64,000 nt of DNA from Chrysemys picta bellii (taxonomy: Eukaryota): contig NW_027052712.1 of assembly GCF_011386835.1 (NCBI RefSeq), positions 124,001 to 188,000 of the forward strand. Direction: 5' to 3'. Positions 10,488 through 64,000 of this stretch are shown here, piece after piece. The notes beneath the pieces are model-generated. The model saw only the letters and a list, made by a program, of their open reading frames with translations. It did not search any database and was not told the origin of the DNA. Position 1 is the stretch's first letter, and every line of letters begins with the position of its first letter. Made by a program: the position numbers and the translations under genes.

Positions 10488-10601
<114 letters not shown>

Positions 10602-30610: not shown

Positions 30611-30696
30611 CAATTGTGGAGGGCTCTGTATTGTGTGTGTGGGGGGAATTCTGTGGAGCAGGGCATCTGCACTGTATGTATGAGGGGCCTGTTTTA

Positions 30697-32839: not shown

Positions 32840-32874
<35 letters not shown>

Positions 32875-42429: not shown

Positions 42430-42620
42430 TTGGGTAGAGCACAGCGCTGGGAGCCATGTATCCTGAGTTCTGCTCCTGACGCTACACTGATTTGTGTTAG
42501 GTAAGCCATATAACATCTTTGTTGCTAAATTTTCCCCATTAGTAAATCAAGGATAAAAATACTAATCTTATAGAAAGCCTGGAAATATAAATTTGTTAAT
42601 GTTTGCACAGTGCTTGAAAA
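42430..42620 (+). mobile_element. MIR-like SINE
   Basis: GGTAGAGCACAG..CTGGGAGCC...TCCTGAGTTCTGCTCCTG head, TTTTCCCCATTAGTAAA..AGGATAA core, TTGCACAGTGCTTGA tail. Confidence 0.6.
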
Positions 42621-42859
42621 CTGTCACCATATTTAATACAAAAAGGCTCAGGATTCATCAAGGGTCATTAGTGACCCAACAGGCAGCTGCAGCTAAGTAC
42701 AGCTGAATATTAGGATAAAGATTACTTCACTTCCATAGAAAAAAATTGGATACTTCTTACACCTTACCCACCAAATGCATCTGAAATGACGACCTCAAGG
42801 TTAGTGCATTGATATTTTGGGATGAGATATTTAAATTGATAGGATCATGAGAAGCACAA

Positions 42860-43359
42860 NNNNNNNNNNNNNNNNNNNNNNNNNNNNNNNNNNNNNNNNN
42901 NNNNNNNNNNNNNNNNNNNNNNNNNNNNNNNNNNNNNNNNNNNNNNNNNNNNNNNNNNNNNNNNNNNNNNNNNNNNNNNNNNNNNNNNNNNNNNNNNNNN
43001 NNNNNNNNNNNNNNNNNNNNNNNNNNNNNNNNNNNNNNNNNNNNNNNNNNNNNNNNNNNNNNNNNNNNNNNNNNNNNNNNNNNNNNNNNNNNNNNNNNNN
43101 NNNNNNNNNNNNNNNNNNNNNNNNNNNNNNNNNNNNNNNNNNNNNNNNNNNNNNNNNNNNNNNNNNNNNNNNNNNNNNNNNNNNNNNNNNNNNNNNNNNN
43201 NNNNNNNNNNNNNNNNNNNNNNNNNNNNNNNNNNNNNNNNNNNNNNNNNNNNNNNNNNNNNNNNNNNNNNNNNNNNNNNNNNNNNNNNNNNNNNNNNNNN
43301 NNNNNNNNNNNNNNNNNNNNNNNNNNNNNNNNNNNNNNNNNNNNNNNNNNNNNNNNNNN
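42860..43359. other. Assembly gap (exactly 500 N)
   Basis: Direct reading. Confidence 0.99.
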
Positions 43360-44535
43360 GCTAAATAGATGGAACTCCTTGAGCCTATCACTATAGACTT
43401 TTTTTTCTAATTCTTTAATCATTCTCATAACTCTACTCTGAAGCCTCTCCAATTTTTTCAACATCCTTCTTGAATTGTGGGCACCAGAACTGGACACAGT
43501 AGTCCAGCAGCCATTGCTCTAGTGCCAAATATAGAGGTAAAATAACCTCTATTCCTACTCAAAATACCCCTGTTTATGCATCCGAGGATTGGATTAGCTC
43601 TTTTGGCCAGTGTGACACTAGGAGCTCATGTTCAGCTGACTGTCCATCATGACCCCCAAATCTTTTTCAGAATCACTGCTTCCTAGGCTAGAGTCCCCCA
43701 GCCTGTAAGTAAGGCTTACATTTTTTGTTCCTAGATGTGTACATTTACATATAACCATATTAAAATGCATATTGTTTGTTGGTGCACAGCTTACGAGTGA
43801 TCCAGATCACTCTGACTCAGTGACCTGTCCTCTTCATGATTTACCACTCCCCCAATTTTTGTATCATCTGCAACCTTTATCAGAGAAAATTTAATGTTTT
43901 CTTCTAGGTCCCTAATAAAAAGGTTCAAAACAGTGAGGCCAAGAACCAGTCCCTGTGGGACCCACTAGAAACATACTCAATGATGTTTCCCCATTTACAA
44001 TTACATTTTAGACCTATCATTTAAATCAACTGATTGTGTGCCATGTTAATTTTATATTGTTCTAGTTTTTTAATCAAGATGTCATAGGGTACCAAGTCAA
44101 AAGCCTTACAGAAGTCCAAGTGTATTATATCAACACTATTACCTTTATAACCAAACTTGTAATCTCATCAAATAAAGATATTAATTTGACAGGATCTATT
44201 TGCCACTAACCCACATTGGTTTGTATTAATTATATTTCCCTCCTTTAATTCTTTATTAATCAGGTTCTGTATCAGGCACTTCATTATCTTGCCAGGAGCA
44301 ATGTCAGACTGACAGGGCTATAATTACCCAGGTGATTCCATTTACCCCCTTTTAAATATTGGCACACCATTAGCTTTCTTATAATCTTCTGGAACTTCCA
44401 CAGTGTTCCAAGATTTATTGAAAAATCAAAAATCCTCAGCCAGCTCTTTTAAAACTCTTGGATGCAAGTTATATGGACCTGCTGATTTAAAAATGTCTGA
44501 CTCTAGTAGCTACTATTTAACATCCTCCTGAGATG
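43360..44535 (-). mobile_element. CR1 LINE fragment running into the gap
   Basis: Minus frame SSGAHNSRRMLKKLERLQSRVMRMIKELEKKVYSDRLKEFHLFS (CR1 ORF2 C-terminus), with RT-like sequence upstream. Confidence 0.85.
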
Positions 44536-47184
44536 GAAATGGAATGAAAAGGGTGATATCATCATCATATATGACTCTATCATCTTTTTTCCCTCTTCAG
44601 GACTCCTTGTCCCAATCTATTCTTCCAACAAACCCAGGTCTGGCTGTTTTGTCCTCTGTGTTCAAATCAGGTATATTCCTCCACTATGTTGCTTGGCCCA
44701 GCAGGGAGAACAGAGTAGAGAGAGAAACTATGCTCTCAGTTCCCGTGCCTGGATCCAGCCTAGGGCTGCAATTGCAGGGAAAGTTCAGCTCAGCTCTGGG
44801 CTGTATCATGCTCTGTGATGACCAAATCTTTGGTGTTTTTAGTTGCCAAGCTGTAGCACATTTCTGAGCATGTGCAAACTGCTGTTTTTCATAGGCTTAT
44901 AACTTGGCCAAATTTGGGCAGACTTTCACAGGAGCAGACTTTCACAGGAACAGTGAAAGATCCGTCCCTGACGCAAAGGCCACCCCCTGCCAAATTTCAA
45001 GTCCTTGCTTCAAAGTATGGGGATGCTAGAGCTTCTAAAATAAAAAGTTGTCAGCATTTTTAATATGGGCAAAACCATATCTATTTCAGTAGCTTCATTC
45101 TCAGAAGTAACTGAACTGTTTTGGCTGAAAATTAAAAAAAAAATGGAGCCTGAGGCAGACATGACATGTAGAATTTCAGCCTGAACAGTTCAAGTCCAGC
45201 AAAGATAGAAGCAACTGAAAACAGGGTCTTAGAATGAGAAGTGTCGAACAACCTTAGTAATTTGTGATTCTACCAGCCTAATCTACAGTATATTCATACA
45301 CAAAATCTCTGTTGTGCATTAGTTAAGGTTGCCACACATCTACTATACTGACACAAACCCAAGGAAATGACAAGTTAAGTCGCCTAACAGCATACATCTT
45401 CTTCTCCACCTATCATTACCACAACTATTGTACATCATATACTACACGCAAACTGTAACTCTTTTCCCACACAGGTTTGCCAACTTTCCAGAATGCCCTT
45501 TACCATATTACTCCATCCAAATACACCAGGCTACTTCCTAACTGTCCTCTTCTGCATATTTCCAAGATTACTGGTTATTTTATGTTTGGGGCAGAGGAAA
45601 GAAAATGTAGAAGAATCTGCCTACTGCCTAATCAGTCAACTGAAGATGCATAATATAGATCATGAAGTCCAGAAAGTGTGTGGTCAATTGATCTGGGAAA
45701 ATAGTGTTAAAATCCTATTCATTTAAACGTTCAGATGAATTTATTTCAGCCATAATCATGCACCTTTTGTATTAAAGTTCAATGATATTTTATTGACATG
45801 TGTTTGTGGAAAGCAAGTTTCTACATAAATGTCAGTATTCTTCCTAGAAAGGGTTAGCTTAGAACATTCTCATTCAAACAAAGAAAGCTGGCTGCCTGCC
45901 TGCCCAGACAAATTATGTTCCTCTTCTACAATACAGCCACTCAAAAGCAGAGAATCAGAAATGGATGCTATAATTTTTTTTTTTTACTTTAAATATAGCA
46001 TATACAGGTATTGAGATTTTTTCATTATGTGAACTTTCATAGGATTCATTCTGTGGTTATCTTTAAACCAGTACTGTATTTAAATAGGATGGAATCTGGT
46101 TTATCTTAAACATTGGGCACTAACTGAACTATTAGCTGTTGATAACAGAACACTTATCATTCCATACTTCAGGATCAAAGAGAATGGATACTCCTGTTAT
46201 ATTGCACTGTGGAAGTTTTATCATAGGAGAATTTTTGCAACATATTATCATCATGATTTTTTTTCACTAATATAATCTGAAAAGTATAAATATGATTATA
46301 AGCTTGCACTGTATTCACAAATACTAATTAAGCAGAAATGTCACTGTGTCATACAACTGACCTTCTAGGAAAAATGGATGGATTGCAATTTTCTAGTAAC
46401 TTTCCAAAATTATTTTCAACCCTCATTAAAGGGGAAAAAGCCAAGCACAGTTGGGTAGAGAAACATCCGAGGCTGACTTTACTGATAATTTGTTAGTTTT
46501 GCAACACCATAAACAAGCACACTCAGTCATGTTTTAAAAAAAAAATGCCATTCATTTAAACTGAAGTTGGCAATACATCTTTTTAGAGTTGAGTGAACTT
46601 GCTTTATTTTCTTCATATATACATGCATGTACACACTCCAGGATTTATTAAGTAACAGGACAAATGCAGAATGGACCAAGTATAAGATACAATATATCTG
46701 CAATGGATACTTGATTTGGATTTCTTAACAAAAAGGGTACTATAGAACTTTCTTAAGCCAATATTCCTATATTACTGCAGTGCATATAGTGAATTCATTA
46801 ACTCTTTGTATAGTAATCCAAGTATGAAAAGGATTAATACTAAACACTATTTACACGTATAATCATGCAGCCATTCTTTCTTTAAGTAAATTTTATAGGA
46901 AATAAAACATAAAGACTGTTAAAAATTTGCAAAAATAAAAATCTTCAGTTTATTGCTCCCTTCTTGGAACAATTTCCTAAACAAATTGAATCTTCTTTTC
47001 ACAAATGATCAAGAGCAATCTTCTTAGCTATAGTTAGCCCCCTGTAAAGATATAAAAATCACATTTAATAATAAATTATACTTTGCACTGACATATAATG
47101 TTCCACCAAAGGATCGAAAAATAATTTATACATTTTAATGAACCAAGCCTCAACATCCCCATGAAGTTAGGAAATGATACAATT

Positions 47185-47275
47185 TTTTAAACACAGAGAA
47201 ACAGAGGCACAGAGAGAATGACTTATTCAGGGTCACTGAGGAAGGCAGTATCAAAACCAGAAATAGAAACCAGGG
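47185..47275 (-). mobile_element. MIR-like SINE fragment
   Basis: GAGAAACAGAGGCACAGAGAG..TGACTT..TCAGGGTCAC is the MIR core on -. Confidence 0.55.
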
Positions 47276-48940
47276 GAGAAATCCTGGCCCCATTGACGTC
47301 AATGGCCTGTGGTGTTCAGGAATCCCTTTGGGCCCACGGTGCTTGAAAGAAATACTCAATTCACTGACCAGTTCCACTGCCTCTGCATAACAGAACATGG
47401 GCTTCTGCAGCATCACTTCCCAAACTTCCTGTCTGTGAAGCTATGCCACTAAAAGATACAGTCCTCAAATCACATCTTCCTTTCCCAGGCAAACTTAATG
47501 ATAATACTTAAATAATGTGATACAATACACAATTCCAAAATGTATAACCTACCTACTAACAAAACTTATTAACGATGTTCAATTAATCTCTGAGGTGCCT
47601 TGCACTGTTTCCTTGGACTTGTGGACATCTCCCTTGAAATATCAGTACTACTGTTGCCAGGAGATGGTAATTTGTTCTGGTAGTGTTATGTCCTGGGGTT
47701 TGTCTGTCTCAACCTGTTGTATTATCTCAACTCACTGCTTCATATCTCCCTCCCTTCTGGAAACTGGAAAAGGTGTTGCCTACTCCTCAGCATGTGTCTG
47801 TCTGGTGTGACAGCCATTAAGACTGTGGGGCAACCTCAAGTGACAGCACTGTCACTGATCTCCATCATAGATGAACACTACATCATTTTCAGGAAGTGGT
47901 GGCAGTTCCCAATTCCCAAATCAGGTTGCGTTTTTATGTTTAGCATTATCTGTCTCTTCATACTTCTGCAAGTCCCCACTTACTCAGACATCAGCTTCTA
48001 CCATTACAAGCATTCAAGTTCTCAGTTTTCTGATAAACAATATTTCTGCATATGACAAACCATATTTTATTGGGGCCATCCTGCAACTTTACAGTGCTAA
48101 GTACAGATCAGAGTCTGACTCTGCAGCCTTTTTCAGTTACGACTTTATTATTTTAACATCACTTTCCACCAACCTGTTGGATTGGGGATAATGGGGACTA
48201 GTGATTACATGTCTAAACCCAAACTGTACTGTAAACTGCTTAAACCTATGCCCAGTAAGCTGTGGTCCAGTCAGACATTATTATGTCAGAAATACTATGC
48301 CTAGCAAAAAAAGATTTGACATGTACAATCACTTGTTTAGCTGTAGTATCGTCTAGTACTATGTGCTACAATAATACAGATAATAATAATCGTAATAGTA
48401 AAACAATCTCAAGGAAATTAGAGTAACAGTTTAAAATAAATACATCGTTTTTTTCCAGCCAACATAAGCATATATCTATAACTACTTTGCTCCCATGGGG
48501 CATTTTTTCCTATGCCATTAACATGGGTTCATTTGCTTGGTGTGGGACAGTTTCCTCAATGCTGCTGTTCATTTGAGGCTACTATAAAATGTCTCTAGGC
48601 TTCTCTTAGATTTTTCAATCCCTAAATGACCTTCATGTATCCTTTTTCTCTAACACCTTAGGGATCACCATCCTGGTGTCTTTAAACAAAATCCCATCTA
48701 GGACTGAGAGCTCCCCCATGAATTGGTGACAGGGGCTGGGAACATGCAGTCCTGGCCACACTGTTGAGCTGTTGCTCTGGCTATTACAGTCCACATTTTC
48801 TTTGGGACTGAATAGTATATCTTGTTTTTTTTTTTAAATCAAACTGAGATGAACAATGCCTACCTCTGGACTTTGCTCCACTGTATTTTTGTCAAATGCT
48901 CTAGAGGGTATGTCTGCAACCCCCAAATCTCTCCCGGGTT

Positions 48941-50790
48941 TCACAGAATCCCAGAAATGTAGGGCCGAAAGGGAACTCAAGAGGCCATCAAATCCAGCTC
49001 CTTGCACTGAGGCAGAACCAAGTAAATTAGACTCTTTATAACAGGGCTTAACATGTTTGAAGACTGTTATCAGGTGTCCCCCACCCGGGTCTTCTTTTCT
49101 CAAGACTAAACACGCTAGTTTTTTTAACCTTTCTTCATAGGTCAGTTTTTCTAATAATTTTATCATTTTTGTTGCTCTCCTCTGGACTCTCTCAAAGTTA
49201 TCCACATCTTTCCTAAAGTGTGACACCCAGAATTGGACAGCGTACTCCAGCTGAGGCCTCACCAGTGCTGAGTAGAGCAGGACAGTTACTTCCCGTGTCT
49301 TACATATGACATTTCTGTTAATACACCCCAGAATAATATTAGCCTTTTTCCCAATTGCATCACATTGTTGGCTCATATTCAATTTATGATCCACTATCAT
49401 CCCCAGATCCTTTTCAGCCGTAAGGCTGCTGAAGCCACTTAGCCAGTTATTCCCCATTTTATAGTTGTGCATTTGAGTTTTCCTTCCTAAGTGAAATACT
49501 TTGCACTTATCTTTACTGAATTTCATTTTCTTGAATTCAGACCAATTCTCTAATTTGTCACGGCTGTTTTGAATTCTAATCCCGTCCTCCAAAGTGCTTG
49601 CAAGCCCTCCCAACTTAATGTCATCTGCAAAGTTTATAAGCATACTCTCCATTCTATTATCTAAGTCATTAAAGAAAATATCGAATATTACCAGACCCAA
49701 GACCTCTCTAGATCTGCTCTCCTACTTTGACAGTTATGCACCCACTTTATAGTCATTTCATCTAGATCACATTTCCCTAGTTTGCTAATGAGAAAATCAT
49801 GTGGAACTGTGTCAGAAGCCTTACTAAAGCCTTACTAAAAATCAAGAAATAAAACGCCTACTATTTCCCATTATTCACTAGGCCAGTAACCCTATCAAAG
49901 AAGGAAATTAGGTTACTTTGGCATGCTTTGTTCTTGACAAATCCATGCTGGCTATTATTTATAACCCTATTTTCCCATGGGTGCTTACAAACTGATGGTT
50001 TAATAATTTGTTCAGTATCTTTCCAAGTATCAAAGTTAGGCTGATAGATCTAGAATTCTCTGGGTCCTCTTTATTTCCCTTTTTAAAAGATAGGTCCTTA
50101 GCAATTTGGCCATATTTCAATTTTTTTGGAGGATTCCTTTTCAATATTCAGGTCATTAAAAAGCTTCTGATGGAGCATATTGGCATCTTACTATTCTTCT
50201 GATCTTTCCTTCGCATTGGGATAGTTTGCAGCTGTGCATGTAATATTGTCTCCTTGAGAAACTGCCAGCTCTCCTGAACTCCTTTATTTCTTAGATTTTA
50301 ATTCCCATGGGAGCTTACAAACCAGTTCTCTAAGTTCATTAAAATCTGCTTTTCTGAAGTCAGTTATCCTTATTCTGCTGCTCTCATTCCTTCCTGTCCT
50401 TGGAATCATGAAATCTATGATTTCATGGTCACTTTCATCCAATCTGCCTTCCACCTTCAGATTCACAACCAATTCCTTTGTGTTGATCACTCACGATCAA
50501 ATCTAAAATGGCTGTCCCCCTTGGTACTTCCTCCACTTTCTGAAACAAAAGTTGTCCTGGATTTCAAGGACTTATTGGAATTTTGTGCTTTACTGTATTA
50601 CTTTTCCAACAGATGTCTGGGTATTTAAATTCCTGCATTACTACAAGATCTTGTGTTTTGGATATTTCTGTTATTTGTTCTAAAAATGCCTCATCCACCT
50701 CTTCTTTCTGATTTGGTGGTCTATAGTAAACCCCTATAATGATGTCACCCCTATGTTTCCCCCTTTTATCTTTACCCTTTCTAGTCAATT
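48941..50790 (-). mobile_element. CR1 LINE with internal deletions (endonuclease end, RT, 3' tail)
   Basis: ORF 48834-49700: INFADDIKLGG...ALVRPQLEYAVQFW...ERVQRRATKMI. ORF 50564-50800: GVYYRPPNQKEEVDEAFLEQ (APE domain). CR1 tail at 48941. Confidence 0.93.
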
Positions 50791-51039
50791 TGCAAATCAT
50801 ACATTTGTAATTGAAAAAATAATCTCTGTATTCTTGGGGTAGGGGAGGGTGTTTGCCAGCTCCATTCTGGCAATCGTAATAAGTGATTTATGGTTAAGTT
50901 CAACTAATGCTCCCATAAAAAAAGGACCTGAAACTTTTTACAACCAAGTACTAAAGGAAAAACCTCTTTCTTTATATGAGTATATTGACACTCCGTTTTT
51001 GTTAGCATGTATGATGCATAAGCCACTGATCTCCAGTTG

Positions 51040-51590
51040 ACTACACTGTTGTAAGAGGACCCTTTCTGGAGGCATCAATGGATAACTTAGTTTTGTGCTT
51101 ACTGTCATAATACCTCCTGACTCCTTAACTCCTCCTGTTTCTCAAACTCACTATTAAGATTTCATTCCATGTCCATTGGACATCTTTGCACAGTAGCACT
51201 TCCAGGTTGCTGGTTTGAGTAGTTATACTAGGCAAATATTTCCCAACATAGTACACCATTCCAAGGAATCTTTGTACCCTTTCCTGTTCTGTTGGGACAG
51301 ATGTGTTGGTGATGGCCTCACTCAACATTACTGTGATCTACCTATACACGTTGCTGTGTTAATGTATCTTTCAGGTATGCTATTTCCATTATATGGAGTT
51401 TACATTTTTGTTTGTTTAGCGTTAGCCAGGCAGCACTGGCTCTTCCTAGAACTGCCTGGAGCCTTTGGTCATGTTCTTCTACTGTGAACATCTTGTATCT
51501 TCCAGCGATACATCTTGAGTGCTGAACACAACCCAAATGGCAGTATGCAGAAATAGTGTCTCCCAAAAGAAGTGCTGAACGTGCACAAAC
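51040..51590 (-). mobile_element. Gypsy/Ty3 pol fragment (RT end to RNase H start), degenerate
   Basis: HDQRLQAVL...LTLNKQKCKL...IAYL (ORF 51342), VQRFLGMVYYVGKYLP...WTWNE (ORF 51125) and KLSIDAS near 51110-51090. Confidence 0.8.
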
Positions 51591-51752
51591 ATGTACTCTG
51601 TTTTTCTAAGGGGACCTGCCAGAACCCCACTGACCCTTGGCTCGCTGGCCTGCTCTGAAGCTCACACTAATGCTACCTAAACTAGTTAGATCAAGCTAGC
51701 ATGGATAGGCTTGCCTTTGCACATCTTGTGCTATGTAGATAAGCCCTTAGAG

Positions 51753-52492
51753 CAGTGGTTTTCAAACCTTTTTTCTGGCAATCCAGTTGAAGAAAATTGT
51801 TGATGCCTGTGACCCAATGGAGCTGTGGATGAGGAGTTTGAGGTGTGGGAGGGGCAGAGGGTTGAGAGTGTGGGCTGCGGGGTGAGGCTGGGGATGAGGG
51901 GTTTGGGGTGCAGGAGGGGGATCCGGGTTTGTGGGGGCTCAGGACTGGGGTGTGGGAGGGGGTCAGAGCTCTGGGCTGGGGGTGCAGGCTCTGGGGTGGG
52001 GCTGGGAATGAGGGGTTTGGGTGCAGAAAGGGGCTCCAGGTTTGGGGGGGCTCAAGGCTGGGACAGGGGATTGGGGCGCGGGCTTACTTTGGGTGGCTCC
52101 TGGTCAGCAGCACAGTGGGTGTACTAAGACAGACTTCCTGCCTCTTCTGGCACCACGGACCGCGCTGCGCCCTGGAAGCGGCCAGCAGCAGGTCCGGCTT
52201 CTAGGCGGAGGCACGCAAGTGGCTCCGTGTGGCTCTTGCCTGTGTGGCTCGGCCAATGGGAGTGTGGAGCCAGTGCATGGGGCAGGGGCAGCACGCGAAG
52301 CCCTGTGGTCCCTCTGTCTAGGAGTCAGACCTTCTACTGTCCACTTCTGGGGTGCAGCGCAGTGTCAGAATAGGGACTAGCCTGCCTTAGCCGGGCAGTA
52401 CCGCCGATGGGACTTAACGGCCCGGTCAGCAGTGCTGACCAGAGCTGCTGCGACCCAGTGCTGGGTCGCAACCCACAGTTTTAAAACTACTG
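51753..52492. mobile_element. hAT MITE, 740 bp, GC-rich interior
   Basis: TIR CAGTGGTTTTCAAAC / GTTTTAAAACTACTG (13/15). TSD CCTTAGAG (51745-51752) / CTTTAGAG (52493-52500). Confidence 0.88.
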
Positions 52493-53764
52493 CTTTAGAG
52501 CAGTCAAACTTTTTTATAGGTTCGCTTTCTTTTTGTATTCTCAGGTGAAAATTTTTCTCATATGTTTTCTGCTATTGTCAGAAAAAAGACTGCCGTCTGA
52601 ATGTCTTCCTTATCACTGGCACCCGTTGCTTGCAGATACAGAGTGAAGTTCTGTTTAAATTTCTTTCAATTGTTTTCCACATTTCACCAAATTTCAGCTC
52701 TGATGGAGCTTTTAGTTGCTCCATTCTGCCACTCAGGTTATTTTCTTTAATTTCTATTGACTCATGGTGTCCAGGAATCACTCTTGGCCCAACATGCTTG
52801 AAAGAGATACTCTTTATTCAGAGTCAAGTTCCAACTGTATCTGCATAACAGAACATGGAATTCTGCAGACCCCTTCCTATGTCTTCCTAGCTCTGAAGCT
52901 AAACACTTAAAGGTACAGTTCCCAATCCCTAGGTGATAAGATGACAACAATCTACCAGAAGACTAAAATGGAATACTCTATGTTGATTGTTGTCAAAGCT
53001 TAACAAACATAAAGGGGTTTTTACTGAAGTATAGACAATCTTTAAAAACTACTCAAGATTCTGCTGTCCTGGCTTTGAACTCAAATATCCAATACATCAG
53101 TGTTTTTCTCAACTACTGAGCAGTTAGTTAAGCAGCATGCATTCAAATGTGCAGTTGCTCAAACTGTGGTTGGTGGGTCCTGGAGAACTGACTGGTTGGC
53201 TCCTCCTTATTTTCAACTTCTAAATGTAATTAAAAGACAGCTAAACTACAATAAACACTTTCCAGTATGACTTTTCCATGTTAAGCAATTATCTAGTTGC
53301 CATAAGAATATTATGATTCCAAATGGGAGGGAAGATAGCATGTTCCATTGATGTTAGAAGAGCAAGTAGTCCATGAGGCAATATTTGCATGAAATAGTAC
53401 TTCATACTATGAAACACTTTGAGAAGCCCTCATTTAGAATATATAATGTGAAATACTGATTTTTCCATTAGTGTTGAATTTTTAAGATCCCACTTTAAGA
53501 TCTGGGCCTAACATGCTGACTACTGCACACAGTACCACAGAGAGGAGGAACAAGAGGAGAGAGTTTTGACAGGGTGGGGCTATTTTCATCAGCATAGTTA
53601 ATTATTAAACTGCTTTGATGCCGGTGGAATGCAGAGGTGTTCTTTTAAGAGGCAATGTTCTACTTGGAATGTCAATATGTACCAGGAACGTGGGTCAGCA
53701 GTTGCAGGTGCTTTTTGCCATCAGTGCCTGGTATGTTTAACACTGAATGAATCAATAGGAAAGT

Positions 53765-53828
53765 ATAGAATCATAGAACTGTAGGACTGGAAGGGACCTC
53801 GATAGGTCTTCTAGTCCAATCACCTGCA
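53765..53828 (-). mobile_element. CR1 extreme 3' end (short fragment)
   Basis: ATAGAATCATAGAACTGTAGGACTGGAAGGGACCTCGATAGGTCTTCTAGTCCAA. Confidence 0.7.
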
Positions 53829-55027
53829 TAACTAAAAAGAGAACCCAAGACAAGACTATGGCTTTAAGTCTCTGCCAGTACTATGTGGGTGAGGAGAATG
53901 AAGCAAGGCTTTTCATTGGCAGAAGCTCTCAAAGACAGACAAAGACTCTCTGAGAACTCAGGAAATGTACACAAAAGTAGTCATTACTGCATCATTTCCC
54001 AAGGTGCAGCATGCTCTCTCTCCCAGAATTCTGCCCACCAATTCTGCGCTACTCATGTGGAGTCTAGTACTATTGTTTATGCTAGACTGTAATGGTCCTT
54101 ATGCAACACAAATGTAAGGTGCCAGATGCACCCTGTAATGGGCTTAACTCTCCCACATTCCCTCTGCAGTCATATTCGATTTGTCAGGTTGGAATGCAGT
54201 AATTTTGATTGAGATTTCAGTGTTAGGATTTTGTATTAGAAAAGGTACTCAGAAGATACTACCTCACACCTAAGGGGCACACTAATAAATCTGCCAAGGG
54301 TTCTCTAAGTAATCTCTGACCTATTTCGTGCCTTTAGTTAGTATAGTTCATAAACCAAAGTTAGCTAAGTCTGGGGAGGTTCTAGCAAAACTGTCACACA
54401 ACTCAAAATATATGACAATCAGGAACAATGCTATGAAGGATTTTACCCTGAAATAGGCTGCAAATTACAATTGCTAAATTAATGTGCATGCAGCCTCAGC
54501 CACTCATGGAAACCGAAAAAAGAACAGAATTGATAGGAGTGTGTGTATAAGAAAAAAATGTTTACCAAGAAGTAAAGTTTATTTTAGTTTCAATGATACT
54601 ACTGACATCTAATGGTAAAACATAGTAACTTTCAGCAAAGGTGTATAAGCTTTTTAAAAGATATGTATTATAAATTAAATGGCTAATACTTAATTAAATG
54701 ATATGACAGCATTTACAGTTTCATAACCTTTGTTTGTGACAAACACATTAAAAGTCAAAACACAAATGTAATTTACTTTTCCTTATTATTTTAACACTGG
54801 CTAAAAAATACTTTTGTTTTCTACCTGTCTTGAAGAAAGACCAATGAAATTAGATTGCTCTCTACATAAATTATTAATTCCTATCATTTTAGCACTGTGT
54901 ATCTATCAAAACCAAATGAAAATTAATATTTTGCAAGTTAGCATTTTAAAATTTGATCTTCATTTCCCTAGAGGATACTCTTAAGATGTTCTGACATACT
55001 ATCCTCCAAAACAAACAGGATTAAATA

Positions 55028-55510
55028 GTGACAACACACCTCTTTCATAACACCAAGGCGCTGGTGTTAGGAGGGCTGGGGGTAAATCAGTTGTACTCTG
55101 GAGGTATAGTTCTTCACGTTAGTTTATTTACAATATTTACAGAATAGGCCCTGGGGGTTTCTTTAAATGAAAAAAACAAAAACACAAAAAAACCATTTCC
55201 TAACTTCCACTGGGATACTGCCTGGCCCCTCCCCAAACAGAAATACACACATGATTTCCCTTATTGAGGTAAAGAGCTGTTTTTTTCTGAGAAGCCTTTT
55301 CCCCATGCTCTACACAACCTTTCTACAACTTGCTTCCCTTTCCTTCCCTCCTATTCTCTCTTTCACTGGAAGAGGTTTTGAAAGGTCACAGGCTGCCCTT
55401 AATTAGCCTCAGGTGGCCATAATTAACCTGAGGTAACCTCTTTCAGTTCACAGAAAACAGGGCTTTAACCATTCTAAGACCGATATACCTGCCCCATTCC
55501 AGACTGTCAG
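55028..55510. repeat. Probable decayed Gypsy-type solo LTR
   Basis: GTGACA...TGTCAG ends; the TTAATTAGCCTCAGGTGGCCATAATTAACCTG motif resembles 8170-8240 of the solo LTR. No clear TSD. Confidence 0.4.
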
Positions 55511-55521
55511 GTCTGACTTTA

Positions 55522-56226
55522 GGGTATGTCTACACTTACAGAGTTTTTGCACTGTCAGTTTCACCGGTGATAGGGAACCAGTGAAAGTAAAGCGCTGGTT
55601 TGGGTACTCACTCAATTCCTCAGGCATCACAGAGTGTTTACACTACCAGCACTTCCATCGTGGATGAGAGCAGCACTGTAGGGCAGCTATCCCACAGTGC
55701 AGCTCTCTCAATAGGTCTTGTGGGAAGGGGGCGGGAGGTGAGCGGAAGGCATTCTGGGTCCCTGCTCAGTGCCCTGTGCTGCCCTGCTTCATGTCTCAGG
55801 AGCCCCATTACTTCCTTGTTTCTTCTGTGGCATTTTTTTTAAAACCTCCTGCTGTCTGGCTGCTTTCCCCGTCACATCTACAAACAAAGGGAAAAGGACC
55901 TTCAAATTTCCTGGGGCTTACAGGGGAGGGGTGGATGTCAATGCATCAGAGCAGTGGAGATGCTGGCCAGAGTGGTCGCTTTTGGAACTGTGGGATATCC
56001 TCCGGAGGCCAAAAGGTGTTTACACTGCTAGAACGTATCTTCACTTTCACAGCAGCGCAAAAAGAACAGCAGTAAGAGCTGTATGCCTCTCGTGAAAGTG
56101 ATTTTCTTTTTGCGGTGAAACTTCTGAGTTTCACCGCAAAAAGTCATTAACAAGTGTAGACGCTCCTGCGGTTTTAGCACAAAAAAGGGACTTTTTGAAC
56201 TTTAAATGGTAAGTGTAGACATAACT
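55522..56226. mobile_element. PIF/Harbinger non-autonomous element, 705 bp
   Basis: TIR GGGTATGTCTACACTT / AAGTGTAGACATAACT. TSD TTA at 55519-55521 and 56227-56229. Confidence 0.88.
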
Positions 56227-56229
56227 TTA

Positions 56230-56295
56230 GAAAGACAAGGTGGGTGAGGTAATATCTTTTATTGAACCAACTTCTGTTGGTGAGAGAGACAAGAC
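56230..56295 (-). mobile_element. Penelope-like terminal fragment (second subfamily)
   Basis: GACAAGGTGGGTGAGGTAATATCTTTTATTGAACCAACTTCTGTTGGTGAGAGAGACAAG; homologous to 29343-29400. Confidence 0.65.
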
Positions 56296-56412
56296 ACAGG
56301 TCTGATTTTATCTTGCTAGCCATGCTGAGTCTTAAAGTGAAAAATGTGGAGGGATAGAAATTTGAGGAATTTACATTCCTGTTCTGAGATTAAAAATATT
56401 AGGATAATAGTA

Positions 56413-56586
56413 CACCTCTACCTCGATACAACGCTGTCCTCGGGAGCCAAAAAAATCTTACCGCGTTTTAGGTGAAACCGCGTTATATAGAACTTGCTTT
56501 GATCCACCGGAGTGTGCAGCCTCGCCCACCCGGAGCGCTGCTTTACCGCATTATATCTGAATTCGTGTTATATCTGGGTAGAGGTG
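56413..56586. mobile_element. Tc1/mariner (Tigger-like) MITE, 174 bp
   Basis: Perfect TIR CACCTCTACC / GGTAGAGGTG, flanked by TA on both sides. Confidence 0.88.
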
Positions 56587-56987
56587 TATACTGTATTGCG
56601 GCATGAAAACATGCAAGTTACTTTTAGCAAATTAATGTCTATTAGTGTGAAGTTAATATAGTCCCGTCCCCTCCTTCCCCCGATCACAGCCCCTTGTATG
56701 AAGTGTCAGGCAACATTACTTTTTCAATTTAAAGAACCTGCACTTGGGCTGGTTATATAGAAATGCAACCCCAATGTTGAACTGAACACTGTACAGAATT
56801 TCACTCACATCCTTCTGTAGTTTGCTAGTAGTAACCTCTCTGCATTCTTCTTTAGTCAAGTTAGCTATGTCAATATTTTTTAAAATTATTTTAGGCTTTG
56901 CTAATCTTATTGTTTGGTATCCTTCACCAAGGCTAGTGTATGAGATTTGTAAATAGCCAGGAACGCATCTTTTGACTAGGCCAAGTG

Positions 56988-56993
56988 TTTATT
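56988..56993 (-). terminator. Candidate polyadenylation signal of the RSPH3-like gene
   Basis: AATAAA on - (TTTATT on +), 36 nt downstream of the stop codon. Confidence 0.5.
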
Positions 56994-57029
56994 GGCCATT
57001 ACCTGATTACTTGATGTTTGGTTTGGTCT

Positions 57030-57184
57030 TCACTTAGCTTCAGGCTCCTGAGTTTCTGTTTGATGTAATGCTTCTATCTGAACGGAGCTTCGATGAGATG
57101 CTTCTGTTTGCCCAGCAGGCTGACCAGATGCTTCTGGCTGATCAAATGCATCTAACCTCTTTTCAACCACCTCACGAATCAATG
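57030..57184 (-). CDS. RSPH3: RSPH3-like terminal coding exon: (T)LIREVVEKRLDAFDQPEASGQPAGQTEASHRSSVQIEALHQTETQEPEAK*
   Basis: Acceptor CCATTTGTCATTTCAG| at 57185. 155 bp = 2 + 51 codons. LIREVVEKRL matches human RSPH3 as I recall it, and the phase-1 join with the 60210 exon is in frame. Confidence 0.88.
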
Positions 57185-58130
57185 CTGAAATGACAAATGG
57201 AGTTACTATAGGGCAGAGCAGAAATTTGTATGGATAAAAAAATGCAATATTTAGAGATGATTTTATACATTATTACATTATTGATTGACTCACAGGGCAA
57301 CAGTGAAATGTAATAGTAAATGCAAAAAATTTTACCTGTGATTGTGATATATGCTTAGCCAAATTAGCTCTAGTTACCTCAAGGCAATTATTTTAAAAGG
57401 TTCTGTTCAACTGTTTTATTATCCCTCGTCTCTTATCTTTGTTCCTTCATAAGTGCTGGAGCAGGCCACAATGCCAGGAACCAGTACTAGTGAGGGGACA
57501 TTAAATATTGAAGGCAAGGGATCCCTCCAAAGCAAAAAGAATCTAACCTATATTTCTGGAGAGCAGTGCAGTTGAAGATCACTTTCACTGAAACAAAAGC
57601 AGCAGCAAAATAATACTGTTTATTCCCTTAAAAATCAATAAATATCACAAAGTGTGGGATCCCACTTTAAAAAAAAGCCCCAAAATTAACCAAAAAAGGT
57701 TTTTATTTTTAAAACAATACAGAAAATGGAACAATACAGAGGTGCCAGTAACAGCTCCATGGTTAAGACTGAGTTGAGTTTTGCACTTAAAGAAGATTCA
57801 CCCTCTCTGTTATGTATCCTCACCAAAACTGTAGCACTTATTCTTTGAGTACAGAATAAATTTTCTTGGAATTTACAAGTAAATCCATTCATTAATTTCC
57901 ACCTTAAAATTAATTTAAAAATGGATTCCATGAGAAATGAAGCACTGTATTTGATCTTTTATTTTTGTCCCAAATGGTCTCAGCTCATGCATTATCTATC
58001 TACACAAAAAATGGGAGATAGATGATTTTTAATAGATCTGATGCAATGGGCAATTTTTGAAAATAGACCTACTAAACACTGAAGGCAGGTGGAGGAAAAC
58101 TAAGGTGGTGCAACGGAATGTAGAGGGTAC

Positions 58131-58315
58131 CTATTGGGCTTACGCCAGCCTACTGCTAAAGGGTCCCCCCCGCAGCCTAAGGGGAGGATCCACAGGGCCT
58201 GAAACTCAAATAATTACGGGGGACAACTAATGTAAAAATAGGGACAGCAGTGCGGTCAAAGGGTCCAAAGAAGGGAAACCTGACCGAGGGTAGGAGGGCA
58301 AAGTACCTGTTAACC
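58131..58315. repeat. Possible ERV/LTR fragment in the RSPH3-like last intron
   Basis: Abrupt GC/CpG-rich block in AT-rich sequence, resembling a turtle LTR 5' segment from memory. No TSD. Confidence 0.35.
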
Positions 58316-59318
58316 GGTCAGTATGCTCCAGCTACTTTGCACTGTTGTAGGAGGGTGCAAAGCAGCTAGAACACATTGGTGAATCTGGCCCTAAAAGTTA
58401 AACACAAATCTGGAAAAAAAAAAAAAAAGATGGATACTACATATCTTCCAGTCATTAGTATATCACATGCTTGTTGAGTGTTCATGGATGAACTTTTTAG
58501 TAATAAAAAAAAATCCCCAGACAAAATTTCATTAGTAAGGAGTTAAGTTTGAGAAATACATATCAGTAATTTAGGGTAAAATACATAAGAGGAAAGTTGT
58601 AATTATCAAAAAAATAAGGTCTAGATTATAGACCCAAGAAATTCAGAATTCAGACTAAATTTTAAAGAATCCAAAGTCAAGGCACAGAAATGCACAGTTA
58701 GGGTACTCAAACAACCTTCTTAAGTCTGACTTGCAGTGACACCATGAGGAAGAGATATATGCAAAAAAGGATGAATGTGTGTTTAAAAATAATTTTAATC
58801 TAATCTGGGACCACACACTGATATGCATTAATTATAACTGTATGATTATTGCATGGTTTAAGATTGGTGCTTTAACTGCAGCCTGTAAAGGTAGACATTT
58901 TTAAAAATACTGTTAAGCTCTGATGAGCCAATCAAGAATCAGAGACTGGTTCATTTACCTGATTAATTACTGCTTTAGTTCAGGGGAAAGTACAGTATTA
59001 TTGATTACTGAGGAGCTAAGCAGACGTCTCCATGAAAAATGTGACTGATTTACACTGTTCCAAATCACCATATTGATTATGTCTAAAATTAATAGTGGAA
59101 AGTTACTAGCCACATGACTTTTCAGCCAATCATGACCAAGAATGTTTCTTCTGTTCTTATTCTTTCATTTAGAATGACCACATTGTTACATGGTTGGGAT
59201 AATTTATACATGTGAGGCCACAGGCCTTTTGTTATATACCAGTGGCCTTAAACAATGTATATGCTTTTCAATTTGAGAAACAAAAGAGCCTTCAGTTTGT
59301 TCAATGGAAAACTATATA

Positions 59319-59809
59319 CAGTAAAAACTTTGGTATCCAGCATGTTGGGGGTATAGGGGGTGCCGGTCAGTCAAAAATTTCGGTTAACTAAGAGGGAGGG
59401 AGTTTGGCTGTGAGAGGGACCTCAGGGCTCGGGGTTGGGGCGTGGGAGGGATTTCAGGGTGCCGGATTCGGTGGCGCTCACCTTGGGCAGCTCCCCACAA
59501 GCGGCGACATGTCCCTGCTGCTCCTAGGCAGAGGCGCAGCCAGGCGGCTCTGCGTGCTGCCTCCACCCACAGGAGCCTCCCCCACAGCCCCCGTTGGCCG
59601 CGGGTCCTGGCCAATGGGAGCAGTGGAGCCAGTGCTCAAGGCAGGATGGGGGCAGCGCATGGAGCCTCTGTGGCCGTTCCCCCACCTAGGAGCAGCAGGG
59701 ACATGTCGCTACTTCTGGATATGGATATTAAAAGTCCAGTTGGATATCAGAAATGCCAGTTTCTAGAGCTTTCCGGTTGGTAAACTGCCGAATAACACAG
59801 CCTTTACTG
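59319..59809. mobile_element. Tc1/mariner (Tigger-like) non-autonomous element, 491 bp, GC-rich interior
   Basis: TA|CAGTAAAAACT ... AGCCTTTACTG|CA (TIR 9/11; right TA mutated). Confidence 0.7.
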
Positions 59810-60209
59810 CACAAGAACATAGTTTTGTTGTCTGTGAAATAAATGAGGAATATAAACTATGTAAATAAAAAGAGAACAATTAACATTCATTAACCATTTC
59901 ACTTCCGCTGAACATAACAGGAACCTCTGTCAGAGACATTCCACATAGGCTGTGTACTGTCAGTAGAGATGTGCTGCTGAAACACGCCTGGTATTTCTAT
60001 TTTTTTTCACTTGACCAATAATTACAAATCACCAGCATAAAATGGGTCTGGGAATTGTCCAACAGTCAGAAGGTTAAAAAAAAATGGTAAAATACCATCC
60101 CATTTGGACAATTGTAACTGTTAAAATATCATCTGCTTCTTTATTTTGCAATAATCTGACTGAAAAAAGTTAAGCAGGGTACATTATATTCCATGACTTT
60201 ATAACTTAC

Positions 60210-60296
60210 TGTCAAGCACTGCCCTTCCCAGAATCTTCTTCTCCAATGTCTTATCTACTTCTGCCATCACCCATGGAAGGAATTCTTTTTCAACGT
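60210..60296 (-). CDS. RSPH3: RSPH3-like penultimate coding exon (87 bp): (D)VEKEFLPWVMAEVDKTLEKKILGRAVLD
   Basis: Acceptor CTTTCTCTCCACAAATCTTACAG| and donor |GTAAGT. Aligns without gaps to human RSPH3 DIEIGFLPWLMNEVEKTMEYSMVGRTVLD (recalled). Upstream exons are not in the window. Confidence 0.9.
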
Positions 60297-62499
60297 CTGT
60301 AAGATTTGTGGAGAGAAAGCAAGATAAAGTATTTTTATTAGTGATGTGTTATAGGATCTTAGGGTCTATTTTCCACTAAATGTATGGTTGTTCCCCATTG
60401 TTGAATGACGACTGGTCCATTAAAGACACTTGTCCTGTAAAGACCTGATTTTACAAGGAATTGAGTCTCCTCAACTGCCACTGACTTTAGTGGTTGTTGA
60501 GAGTGCGCAGCCTCTTGCTCAATCAGGCCCCAAGTTAAAAATGAAAAATTGCATTTAGTTAGATGAAAATAAGGTTCAGTAATTTAGGATAGTAACAGTT
60601 CTGCTTTTAATTTGAACATATCCTGGCCTCTGTCCTGTCCAAACTGTTTAATTGTCTATGCCCAAGGAGTTCCCGCTTATCCTGGTATTTCCAACATTAT
60701 CCTATTTTAACAAGACAACCCTATGTCTTGCCATATTTGCAAGATACACACAGGTTCTGCTTGTGCCCAGTGACTGATGCTGTGTAAAAAACTTAGATAG
60801 AAAGTACTTTCAGGGCCCATGAAATGTCACTATGTTCAACACGAAGTTTCAATGCAACATAACATTTGCATGTAATTGTTATACTGACAAAGTTTTCTCT
60901 CATTACTTAGGTCCTCAAAAGTGGCATTTCTCAGGCAAAAATAAGTTGTACACCAGAGCAGGCAGCTTGTAGCAAAATGCCAAACAGAATTGTATTGGAA
61001 ACCTTAAAGTCATCAATAATGGCAGCAGTTTACTTATTGGAAGTGCACTTAGGTTTCACTGTATTAATAAATTAAAAAGCAAGAAGTACAGAATTGAACT
61101 CCTTGGACCTGACAGTACCTCTCTTCTTGCCAGCTAGACCTCTACTTACAAGTAGTCATAATAAGACTCTGAGTGTTTGCTTCTGAGATAGACAGAGGGT
61201 TAGCCAAATTTACAAGTGCAGTGCATGAATGACTGGACTGACCCACAAGAAGAATTACTGTTCGAGCTAAACATGTGATTGGGCTGATTTATTAGGCCAA
61301 ATTGTTAAACCTTCTGGACTCATCATATGGGACCAGAAAAAAAAAGGGCATTCAAAGTTAAAAATTCTATTTCAGTAGTTTGAACTTCAGCCACTGATAC
61401 TAGCCAAAATAATTCAGAGAGAGCATTTTCATTCAGTTCTAAATATGTGATATCCGCAGACATCCATGGTATCAATGTGCATAAAAATATGCCATAGAAA
61501 CTTTGTTTTGAAGCAGGAACCCAAGGTAGTAGAAATTTGGCAATACATCTTATCTAATTTTCTCACATCTTTTCATCTACCACTATTTATCCCATCACTT
61601 TTTTTTTTTTTTTTTTTTTTTTGGGTAAGTGAATGGACTGTTTGTGAAAGATGGAATGATGGCGTTGAGACAAAGTCCTCTCCCCTTAGAAACCCAGGAA
61701 GGAGGGACCATTTCTAGAGCTGAGCATCTGGCTCATTTCTATGGCTGTTCAGCCCTAGACCATTCTTCTTAGACTGCCATCAAGAAAGCCAAACATGATG
61801 ATGTTTTCTGTGTCCTGGACACCTACCACTAGATATTCCTCAGAGACCCACAACTCGTATCACAGAAGCCAAAGAAGAGCCATTAAATGGTAATGACTTT
61901 CAGGGCCTAATTTGAGTCAAGAAGCAGAAGCACATGTCTATATTTTGCATGCAATGCTGGATATACATGTAGATGTGCATAGCTAAACAGATGCCCTCTT
62001 TTTCATGCATAGAACTGTATGCACCTACTTCTGGCAGAAAATCTGGCTCTCAATCACTGTGATTCACAGGAGTGACCTAAAGATGATGGGTTTCATGAAT
62101 TATTATAAATTCCTTGAGCCATCCAGTTCTGTCTCTTGCACTCCCTTTTCACATCCATCCTGTCTCTTAAGGTGACGACTATTGGTTTTCAGTTAGGAAG
62201 AAGGAATTGCAGTTTTATTTATAGCTGGCTTTCACAGGCACTCCATGTGTAAGCTGCATAGAATTATAATGTCTTCACTACACTACAATTGTAAACATAT
62301 TGTGGCAGCCAATTATAACATGGTTGCCCTCCTCCAGTCATTGTTTTAATACTTTTTGCTTTTTCCAGTATAGATGGAAACAAACTCTTATAATCATATT
62401 AAGAAAACCATACTACAGCTCTGATTTTGTCAGGTCTGTAGTATGGTTACAGCAAGATATGGTACACAGACTAGACCAAACTAAGTTATAACACAACCT

Positions 62500-62692
62500 G
62501 GGGGGAGGGATAGCTCAGTGGTTTGAGCATTGGCCTGCTAAACCCAGGGTTGTGAGTTCAATCCTTGAGGGGGCCACTTGGGGATCTGGGGCAAAATCAG
62601 TACTTGGTCCTGCTAGTGAAGGCAGGGGGCTGGACTCGATGACCTTTCAAGGTCCCTTCCAGTTCTAGGAGATAGGATATCTCCATTAATTT
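62500..62692 (+). mobile_element. tRNA-derived turtle SINE (tortoise PolIII/SINE type), young copy
   Basis: Same A/B boxes and CR1-like tail as 30697-30908, with CpGs retained (GGACTCGATGACC). Confidence 0.9.
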
Positions 62693-63754
62693 CTAATTTC
62701 TGGGCATTAAGTTAAATAGCTGCCTGCTGGTATGGTAAAATATTGTAGTGCAGATGGTCCCTTGGGCAGCAGTTTGTGGAAGATGTTCACCTCACGAGCT
62801 GAGGAGTGTGACTGTAACATGCAATGACCCTGCTGATAGAGGGTGGAAAAACAATTGTGTACTTTTTAAACACCAGTCTCTCTCTAGGCCAATAATTGCA
62901 CGTGTGCCACAATGGTATTCTTCCGGGGACCTAAAAAGGTCAGACTTTGAAGCCACTGATTTGCATAACTGCTATTTCCTTTTTAACAAATTCTGAAACT
63001 TTCCATGCCAGAGAAACAATTCACTTTAGATTTAAAAAATGTAAATACTTGATTATCTTTCTAATAACATATCTCTTTGTTTAGTGTCCAGTTTGAATGG
63101 CAACAAGGTTTGCTCTGATTGCACTGGCCTGGAAGTTGAATGGTTATTTTTTTGAATACCATGTACCTAAGTTGCTGAAACTAGTAGGCACTTGGCTAAC
63201 CTTTTCATGCCATAATCACTGAGCTTCTAGGGTGATCCAAGCTGCCAGAAAGGGAATATTCAATCAGTAGGTTCTCTTTTGTGGAGTTTTTAGTGCTCAT
63301 GAAAGCTGCCAGACTGATAGCTATGGAGACTTAGTCTTCCATTTGTTTGAAGGGCAAAGCATAGGTGGAGCAGTGCTGTATCCTCATGTCACAGAAGCCA
63401 AGTTTAGTGCCAACCCCCACCACATGTGAGAGCAGGTGTTGGGGTAGGCAAGAACCTATCCACAGCATCCATCAGAAGCAGAACAGGGGAGGGTTTGGAG
63501 TGCAAGGGGTGAGGAATCAAGGAGCTAAAGATAGTGTGGGGCAGACAAAAGGAAAAGGGCAATTAGTGGAGTAAATCTAGCAGTTCTGCTACCCATACTG
63601 TTTTCTCACTGTTTATTCCCTGACATCCATTCTGCTTTCTGTTCTCTGTTCCCTGCTTGGCCCCTGCCTGTCTTCCATACTGTCTCCACTACTGCCCCTG
63701 CCTGATCAGGAAGATACTTGTTCCAACCAATTCCTCCCCTCTTCTGATAATGTT

Positions 63755-63890
63755 TAACAGCATCAAATACCCCAAAAACATCTATGTGGGTGAAACCAGA
63801 CAATCACTATGCTCTCAAATGAACTCATTCAGAAACATGATAAAAGACAAAAACACCATCTCTCCTGTGGGTGAACACTTTTCACAAAGC
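63755..63890 (+). mobile_element. Penelope-like GIY-YIG endonuclease fragment
   Basis: NIYVGETRQSLCSQMNSFRNMIKDKNTISPVGEHFSQ (ORF 63657): YVGET...R.N.H...V.EHF pattern of PLE endonucleases. Confidence 0.8.
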
Positions 63891-64000
63891 AAAAACAACA
63901 AGGAGTCTGGTGGCACCTTAAAGACTAACAGATTTATTTGGGCATAAGCTTTCGTGAGTAAAAACCTCACTTCTTCGGATGCACGAAGAAGTGAGGTTTT
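63891..64000. mobile_element. Penelope-like terminal repeats, head-to-head, cut by the window end
   Basis: GGTGGCACCTTAAAGACTAAC...GCATAAGCTTTCGTGAG...CTCACTTCTTCG|GATGCA|CGAAGAAGTGAGGTTTT inverted junction. Confidence 0.85.
63942..63982 (-). ncRNA. Minimal type-I hammerhead ribozyme fold within the Penelope terminus
   Basis: Minus strand reads GCAU-CCGAAGA-A-GUGAG-GUUUUUA-CUCAC-GAAA-GC-UU^AUGC. Stem I GCAU/AUGC, stem II GUGAG/CUCAC, palindromic stem III AGCU. Confidence 0.65.

What the first reader, a model, noticed from the sequence alone, without database searches (positions are those of the whole stretch)
57030..60296. Intron-containing RSPH3-like gene convergent with RYR2, invisible in the ORF track
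Seen: two minus-strand exons with textbook splice sites, matching phases, an open frame and a nearby AATAAA. They translate to DVEKEFLPWVMAEVDKTLEKKILGRAVLDTLIREVVEKRL. Known: this is the conserved C-terminal part of RSPH3, the ciliary radial-spoke stalk scaffold/AKAP. In human, RSPH3 lies at 6q25 near EZR and TAGAP, while RYR2 at 1q43 is followed by ZP4 and CHRM3. Inference: either RSPH3 sits at a different locus in this lineage, or this is a second, DNA-duplicated (intron-retaining) RSPH3 paralogue.
Basis: partly seen in the sequence, partly recalled or inferred. Interest (0 to 1): 0.7.

Follow-up and report, generated by a model that had tools for sequence, protein, structure and literature searches.

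The report
Last two exons of turtle RSPH3
The two minus-strand exons are real, but they are simply the last two coding exons of the already annotated radial-spoke gene RSPH3 of the painted turtle, lying tail-to-tail about 46 kb from the end of RYR2; this is an ordinary gene, not a hidden one.

Summary
Exon A (60296-60210) and exon B (57184-57030) lie on the minus strand. They have AG/GT splice sites, matching phases, a TGA stop and an AATAAA 37 nt downstream. Their 79 residues are 100% identical to the C-terminus, same stop included, of RefSeq XP_005291598.2, [quoted passage not shown]. That protein has a full Radial_spoke_3 domain (361 bits). So this is the annotated RSPH3 of the painted turtle. 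In a tree it nests among emydid turtles, as an orthologue should.

By alignment to Chlamydomonas RSP3, the two exons encode the end of the conserved domain. This includes the Dpy-30-docking amphipathic helix, which spans the splice junction. An acidic tail follows.

The RYR2 last coding exon ends at 10601 (+). The genes are therefore convergent, about 46 kb apart, across transposon remnants and a 500-N run.

RefSeq does list a second gene in this species, "RSPH3 homolog B-like". It is 98% identical up to residue 360 and then has a different tail. It is not the copy in this window.

The only earlier scan note here is a hammerhead note on this same window.

The parts
60210..60296 (-). Penultimate coding exon of RSPH3 (87 nt; residues 294-323 of XP_005291598.2, first and last codons split). 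It encodes the FLPW segment and the first two thirds of the Dpy-30-docking helix.
   Evidence: Splice sites read; translation; Pfam PF06098 positions 186-213; RSPH3 PDB chains; 100% identical to P0146.
57185..60209 (-). Last intron (3025 nt, GT..AG, 39% GC). It contains a GC-rich inverted-repeat element at 59495-59718.
   Evidence: The intron position is shared with birds: read-through gene models P0001 and P0005 break at the same ..LD codon.
57030..57184 (-). Last coding exon of RSPH3 (coding part; residues 323-373 plus TGA at 57032-57030). It encodes the end of the amphipathic helix and of the Radial_spoke_3 domain, then a 36-residue acidic tail.
   Evidence: tblastn gives E 2.8e-26 and 100% identity to P0146 up to the same stop. 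Alone it has no Pfam or PDB hit, because only about 14 of its residues are conserved beyond sauropsids.
56970..57029 (-). Short 3' UTR with an AATAAA poly(A) signal at 56993-56988. The exact cleavage site is not determined.
   Evidence: The next AATAAA on this strand is at 56263. No read data were available.
60297..64000 (-). Part of the preceding RSPH3 intron. No further RSPH3 exon lies in the window, so the upstream exons are beyond 64000.
   Evidence: Three-frame reading and tblastn with 30+ full-length RSPH3 proteins find nothing here.
3152..10601 (+). Context: the last four coding exons of RYR2 (3152-3216, 4891-4991, 6416-6467, 10506-10601 including the TAA stop).
   Evidence: Motif scan; boundaries read; the last exon matches the exact C-terminus of RyR2 chains at 4.8e-18 to 1.6e-17, with RyR1 and RyR3 slightly lower.
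10602..57029 (.). Context: 46.4-kb interval between the convergent stop codons (RYR2 and RSPH3 3' UTRs plus intergenic DNA). It holds transposon remnants and a 500-N run at 42860-43359. No other host gene was detected.
   Evidence: Pfam: DDE_Tnp_4 at 18712-19074 (+), hAT dimerisation domain at 28583-28975 (+), RVT_1 at 48837-49721 (-).

Best explanation
These are the last two coding exons, plus a short 3' UTR, of the canonical RSPH3 gene of the painted turtle (Chrysemys picta bellii or a near-identical genome). RSPH3 is the dimeric stalk scaffold of the ciliary and flagellar radial spoke. By homology, the segment encoded here is the end of the Radial_spoke_3 domain. It includes the second amphipathic helix (AH-D), which in Chlamydomonas RSP3 (residues 291-308) docks the Dpy-30 domains of the spoke-neck proteins RSP2 and RSP23. 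In the turtle this helix corresponds to residues 312-329 and is split by the intron between the two exons. A non-conserved acidic tail follows. The gene runs on the minus strand, and its 3' end faces the 3' end of RYR2 about 46 kb away. Shown here: exon structure, identity to the annotated protein, domain mapping and phylogenetic placement. Inferred: the helix function (from Chlamydomonas experiments), expression, and that the upstream exons lie beyond the window.
For: The splice sites, phases, stop and AATAAA were read directly. All 79 encoded residues are identical to the C-terminus of P0146 = XP_005291598.2 / XP_042713194.2, and the protein ends at the same stop. No other turtle protein is identical: there are 1-13 differences, increasing with phylogenetic distance. 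P0146 carries a complete Radial_spoke_3 domain at residues 110-337 (361 bits). It aligns end to end with the human, mouse and Chlamydomonas RSPH3/RSP3 chains of solved radial spokes. In the block around the helix, the ungapped alignment places Chlamydomonas residue x opposite turtle residue x+21. AH-D was mapped to residues 291-308, and V300P abolishes binding (PMC3494852). In the ML tree, P0146 sits with Trachemys and Malaclemys inside the turtles. Only one copy of each exon is in the window.
Against: Only 2 exons are visible, so the rest of the gene cannot be seen in this window. The RefSeq model is a prediction. A second, 98% identical RSPH3-like gene exists in the same species, so 'the' RSPH3 is not strictly single-copy here. 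An older model, XP_005291598.1, carries a slightly different last exon with 2 residue differences. This hints at more than one copy or allele of this exon.
Confidence: 0.92

Rival explanations
1. The window copy is the daughter of a DNA-level duplication: an intron-retaining second RSPH3 paralogue placed next to RYR2, while the ancestral copy sits elsewhere.
For: RefSeq lists two RSPH3-type genes in Chrysemys picta bellii: P0146 and P0142, 'homolog B-like' (XP_065434917.1). They differ at 7 of 362 residues. Each carries its own derived substitutions relative to other emydids.
Against: The window copy keeps the full ancestral C-terminus and stop shared by all 20+ turtles. The B-like copy loses homology after residue about 360 and has an unrelated 79-residue tail that is not encoded in the window. 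A copy truncated at a duplication boundary is the more likely daughter. Both proteins are recorded on a contig of the same length, 979,666 bp. This suggests a local duplication rather than one copy at RYR2 and another at a distant ancestral site. No other turtle among the 32 cluster entries shows a second gene.
Confidence: 0.12
2. The RSPH3-RYR2 adjacency is an assembly artefact: two unrelated pieces joined across the N run at 42860-43359.
For: A 500-N run lies between the two genes. The species' annotated RSPH3 sits on a sub-megabase scaffold of 979,666 bp, whereas other turtles have it on 196-225 Mb sequences. This indicates a scaffold-level assembly.
Against: The operators state that N runs may also be deliberate masks. 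Nothing in the flanks suggests a chimera, and both sides are similar transposon-rich intergenic DNA. To my knowledge (from memory, not checked here), both genes lie on the same ancestral chromosome, the chicken chromosome 3 homologue. The contig sizes for RSPH3 fit that.
Confidence: 0.1
3. The two exons are a dead 3' fragment (pseudogene remnant) without upstream exons.
For: No upstream exon is visible in the 3.7 kb available. There are no junction reads.
Against: The frame is intact, both splice sites are canonical, and there are no differences from a full-length annotated 373-residue protein. Conservation follows the turtle phylogeny. Introns longer than 3.7 kb are normal in this genome; the last one is 3.0 kb.
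Confidence: 0.03

Closest known systems
RSPH3 of Chrysemys picta bellii, RefSeq XP_005291598.2 / XP_042713194.2 (P0146)
   Same: Residues 295-373 are identical to the window's translation. The split codons 294 and 323 fit, and the stop is the same.
   Different: Nothing in the part that can be compared. Residues 1-293 are encoded outside the window.
'Radial spoke head protein 3 homolog B-like' of the same species, XP_065434917.1 (P0142)
   Same: 355 of 362 residues are identical to P0146. It has the same Radial_spoke_3 domain and the same recorded contig length.
   Different: It has three substitutions in the last-exon part (G355, I357, K361). Homology is then lost, and an unrelated 79-residue tail follows that is absent from the window. 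It is not the copy in this window.
Human RSPH3 (PDB 8j07 chain E) and mouse Rsph3b (8wzb chain D)
   Same: The same domain, colinear to turtle residue about 349. The FLPW..GR.VLD.LIREVVE.RL segment is conserved. To my knowledge (from memory, not checked here), mouse has a young tandem pair, Rsph3a/Rsph3b. This parallels the Chrysemys pair.
   Different: Mammalian proteins have longer N-termini (560 and 606 residues against 373) and different tails. To my knowledge (from memory, not checked here), human RSPH3 lies at 6q25.3 between EZR and TAGAP, not beside RYR2 (1q43).
Chlamydomonas RSP3 (PDB 7jtk chain E), the experimentally dissected radial-spoke AKAP
   Same: It aligns over turtle residues 16-329. 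Its Dpy-30-binding helix AH-D, residues 291-308 (PMC3494852), corresponds to turtle residues 312-329, which these two exons encode.
   Different: Identity is low in the helix itself. The C-terminal 200 residues of the algal protein have no counterpart. Binding partners in turtle are untested.

Membership tests
RSPH3 / Radial_spoke_3 (Pfam PF06098) | Significant match to the Radial_spoke_3 profile | tested here: met
   Exon A alone scores 21.2 bits, E 2.2e-4, below the 26.4-bit cut-off because it is a 28-residue fragment. The full-length protein whose C-terminus is identical to the window scores 361 bits over profile positions 1-228 of 229.
RSPH3 / Radial_spoke_3 (Pfam PF06098) | Both exons align colinearly, in consecutive residues, with bona fide RSPH3 proteins up to the natural stop | tested here: met
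   tblastn of turtle and bird RSPH3 proteins: residues 294-323 map to 60297-60208 and residues 320-373 map to 57194-57033.
RSPH3 / Radial_spoke_3 (Pfam PF06098) | Dpy-30-docking amphipathic helix (AH-D) near the end of the domain | tested here: met
   Met at sequence level only. Chlamydomonas residues 291-308 correspond to turtle 312-329, with paired hydrophobic residues recurring every four residues (PMC3494852). Binding was not tested.
RSPH3 / Radial_spoke_3 (Pfam PF06098) | RIIa-binding amphipathic helix (the AKAP feature, AH-R) | not testable with these tools
   It lies in upstream exons outside the window. It was not examined separately in P0146.
RSPH3 / Radial_spoke_3 (Pfam PF06098) | A complete gene at this locus, transcribed and spliced at 60210/57184 | not testable with these tools
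Orthologue of the single vertebrate RSPH3 (as opposed to an old paralogue) | Placement in the gene tree follows the species tree | tested here: met
   P0146 groups with Trachemys and Malaclemys inside Emydidae, within the turtles, with birds as outgroup. The difference counts rise with taxonomic distance.
Orthologue of the single vertebrate RSPH3 (as opposed to an old paralogue) | Conserved neighbours in related genomes | not testable with these tools
The other collections hold no vertebrate genomes. No paper was found.
RYR2 (neighbour) | Terminal exon identical to the RyR2-type C-terminus | tested here: met
   Best PDB matches are RyR2 residues 4935-4966/4967 at 6e-18. RyR1 and RyR3 score slightly lower and do not match the last residue.

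The most novel reading that the evidence does not exclude
The tail-to-tail RSPH3-RYR2 adjacency is real. It marks an evolutionary breakpoint that joins the homologues of human 6q25.3 and 1q43 in turtles, or in sauropsids generally. In addition, the painted-turtle lineage has a young local duplication of RSPH3 whose second copy ('B-like') lost the native last 13 codons and gained a new tail. This would be an independent parallel to the mouse Rsph3a/Rsph3b pair.
Probability: 0.4. Interest if true: 0.25.

Novelty: already known. Interest (0 to 1): 0.12.

Why it matters
It matters little. The result shows that reading raw sequence can recover short exons of a conserved ciliary gene, but the gene is already in RefSeq. 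Two modest points remain. The first is a gene-order difference from human at the RYR2 3' flank, of the kind common between amniote lineages. The second is an annotated, nearly identical second RSPH3 gene in the painted turtle, which may be a young duplicate or an assembly duplication. Neither bears on an open question about radial spokes.

Tried and rejected
- **Synteny in other turtles, birds and outgroups:** The other locus collections hold no vertebrate genomes.
- **Literature:** four searches (RSPH3 with RYR2/synteny, TAGAP/chicken, turtle, chicken) gave nothing on gene order. PMC6679542 lists RYR2 but no flanking genes.
- **Earlier scan notes:** they gave no neighbouring-window information.
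- **Exon B alone:** no Pfam or PDB hit. Natural full-length proteins were aligned to the DNA instead.
- **Upstream RSPH3 exons in 60297-64000:** none found.
- **The tail of the B-like protein:** searched for in the window and not found.
- **RYR2 protein ids:** an RYR2 id would have let me compare accession order or chromosome with RSPH3. I could not obtain one, because the word search only sees proteins of similar length to the query exon and the single representative search had been used.
- **Deep paralogue:** rejected by the tree.
- **Other host genes between RYR2 and RSPH3:** rejected. Only transposon domains were found.

Full report
**What is in the sequence**

- On the minus strand, an 87-nt exon (60296-60210) follows a pyrimidine-rich tract and an AG. 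A GTAAGT donor follows it.
- After a 3025-nt intron and a TTTCAG acceptor, a second exon runs from 57184 to a TGA at 57032-57030.
- An AATAAA lies 37 nt further on, at 56993-56988.
- Exon A ends with one base of a codon and exon B supplies the other two, giving Thr.

**Identity**

- Exon A alone matches Pfam Radial_spoke_3 at profile positions 186-213 of 229. The E-value is 2.2e-4, below the cut-off only because the piece is 28 residues long.
- Its best matches among solved structures are the RSPH3 chains of mammalian radial spokes. Exon B alone finds nothing.
Each exon was searched by reference, and natural full-length proteins were then aligned to the DNA.
- A 30-residue reference around exon A, sent to the representative library, returned five RSPH3 proteins.
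- One of these, goose RSPH3, was used for the word search. It returned 1328 RSPH3 proteins, turtle ones included.
- tblastn of these against the window hits only the two exons, colinearly. It finds no further RSPH3 exon in 60297-64000. The upstream exons must lie beyond the window.

**Which gene**

- Cluster look-ups gave 32 turtle RSPH3 entries.
- One of them, P0146 = XP_005291598.2 / XP_042713194.2, [quoted passage not shown], is identical to the window over all 79 residues and ends at the same stop.
- Every other turtle differs at 1 to 13 positions, roughly in order of phylogenetic distance.
- The window therefore comes from the painted turtle or a near-identical genome, and the finding is the 3' end of its annotated RSPH3.
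- P0146 has a complete Radial_spoke_3 domain at residues 110-337 (361 bits).
- In a maximum-likelihood tree of 22 turtle and 3 bird proteins it sits with Trachemys and Malaclemys inside the turtles. That is what an orthologue does, not an old paralogue.

**What the encoded part does (by homology)**

- P0146 aligns with human, mouse and Chlamydomonas RSPH3/RSP3 chains from solved radial spokes.
- In the relevant block the alignment with Chlamydomonas RSP3 is ungapped, with algal residue x opposite turtle residue x+21.
- Sivadas et al. (PMC3494852) mapped the Dpy-30-domain binding helix AH-D to algal residues 291-308. They showed that V300P abolishes binding, and that this helix anchors RSP2 and RSP23 at the spoke neck.
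- The turtle equivalent is residues 312-329. It begins in exon A, crosses the split Thr323 codon and ends in exon B.
- The two exons therefore encode the FLPW segment, this docking helix, the last residues of the conserved domain, and a 36-residue acidic tail conserved only among turtles.
- This functional reading is inference. Nothing was tested in turtle.

**Surroundings**

- On the plus strand the window holds the last four coding exons of RYR2: 3152-3216, 4891-4991, 6416-6467 and 10506-10601.
- The last exon matches the exact C-terminus of RyR2 chains best.
- The two genes are convergent, with 46.4 kb between their stop codons.
- That interval contains remnants of a Harbinger-type transposase, a hAT element and a reverse transcriptase. 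No other host gene is recognisable.
- It also contains a 500-N run at 42860-43359. The RYR2-RSPH3 link therefore crosses either an assembly gap or a mask, which is a caveat for any synteny claim.
- Rfam finds nothing in the window at gathering thresholds.

**The paralogue question**

- The same species has a second RefSeq product, P0142 = XP_065434917.1, "radial spoke head protein 3 homolog B-like". It is recorded on a contig of the same length (979,666 bp) as P0146.
- The two are identical at 355 of 362 residues. Each has its own derived substitutions relative to other emydids.
- After residue about 360, P0142 loses homology and continues with an unrelated 79-residue tail that is not encoded in this window.
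- The window copy keeps the C-terminus shared by all turtles. It is the canonical copy. If the duplication boundary lies in the last exon, it is also the one expected to keep the native 3' flank, which is the RYR2 side.
- No other turtle in the clusters shows a second gene.
- I cannot tell whether the B-like gene is a real young duplicate or a duplicated haplotype in a scaffold-level assembly.
- An older model of the same accession (version .1) differs from the window at two residues in the last exon. This again hints at more than one copy or allele.

**What could not be done**

I did not resend it, so there is no read evidence for the 60210/57184 junction.
The neighbours of RSPH3 and RYR2 in other turtles, crocodilians, birds and outgroups could not be examined.
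- Literature searches gave nothing on this gene order.
- The human positions (RSPH3 at 6q25.3 between EZR and TAGAP; RYR2 at 1q43) and the location of both genes on the chicken chromosome 3 homologue are from my own knowledge.
- The contig sizes recorded for RSPH3 are 196-225 Mb in turtles and 100-148 Mb in birds. They fit a chromosome-3-sized molecule but prove no adjacency.

**Verdict**

- This is a correct exon call on an already annotated, ordinary ciliary gene.
- The difference in gene order from human is plausible and unremarkable.
- The only mildly interesting residue is the annotated second RSPH3-like gene of the painted turtle, which lies outside this window.

Noticed in passing
window 42860-43359: A run of exactly 500 N lies between the RYR2 end and the RSPH3 end. 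The apparent adjacency of the two genes depends on whatever joined or masked this spot.
   Followed up: no
outside the window (protein P0142, XP_065434917.1): The painted turtle has an annotated second RSPH3-type gene ('homolog B-like'). It is 98% identical to RSPH3 up to residue 360 and then has a different 79-residue tail. It is recorded on a contig of the same length as RSPH3. It may be a young local duplicate or an assembly duplication.
   Followed up: partly
protein P0152 against P0146 (XP_005291598 versions .1 and .2): The two versions of the RefSeq model differ only in the last exon (T346/G355 against A346/S355). The window carries the version .2 residues.
   Followed up: partly
window 18712-19074 (+), 28583-28975 (+), 48837-49721 (-): Transposon remnants between the genes: Harbinger-type DDE_Tnp_4 (E 1.4e-14), hAT dimerisation domain (E 9e-6) and a reverse-transcriptase fragment (E 3e-5).
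   Followed up: partly
window about 39280-39900: A GC-rich repeat with a period of about 100 nt, open in several frames and translating to Pro/Ala/Cys-rich text. tblastn noise hits recur at 39344, 39444, 39544 and 39644.
   Followed up: no
window 59495-59542 and 59671-59718: A 48-nt inverted repeat (81% complementary, 128 nt apart) inside a GC-rich element in the last RSPH3 intron. It is probably a small mobile element.
   Followed up: no
Rfam gives no hammerhead match in 56000-64000 on either strand, even at E up to 1, and none at gathering score in the whole window. This does not exclude a minimal motif.
   Followed up: partly
protein P0127 (TFK01006.1, Platysternon megacephalum): A 373-residue protein that is clearly RSPH3 is named 'ribosomal protein S6 kinase beta-2' in its GenBank record. 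This looks like a naming error.
   Followed up: no
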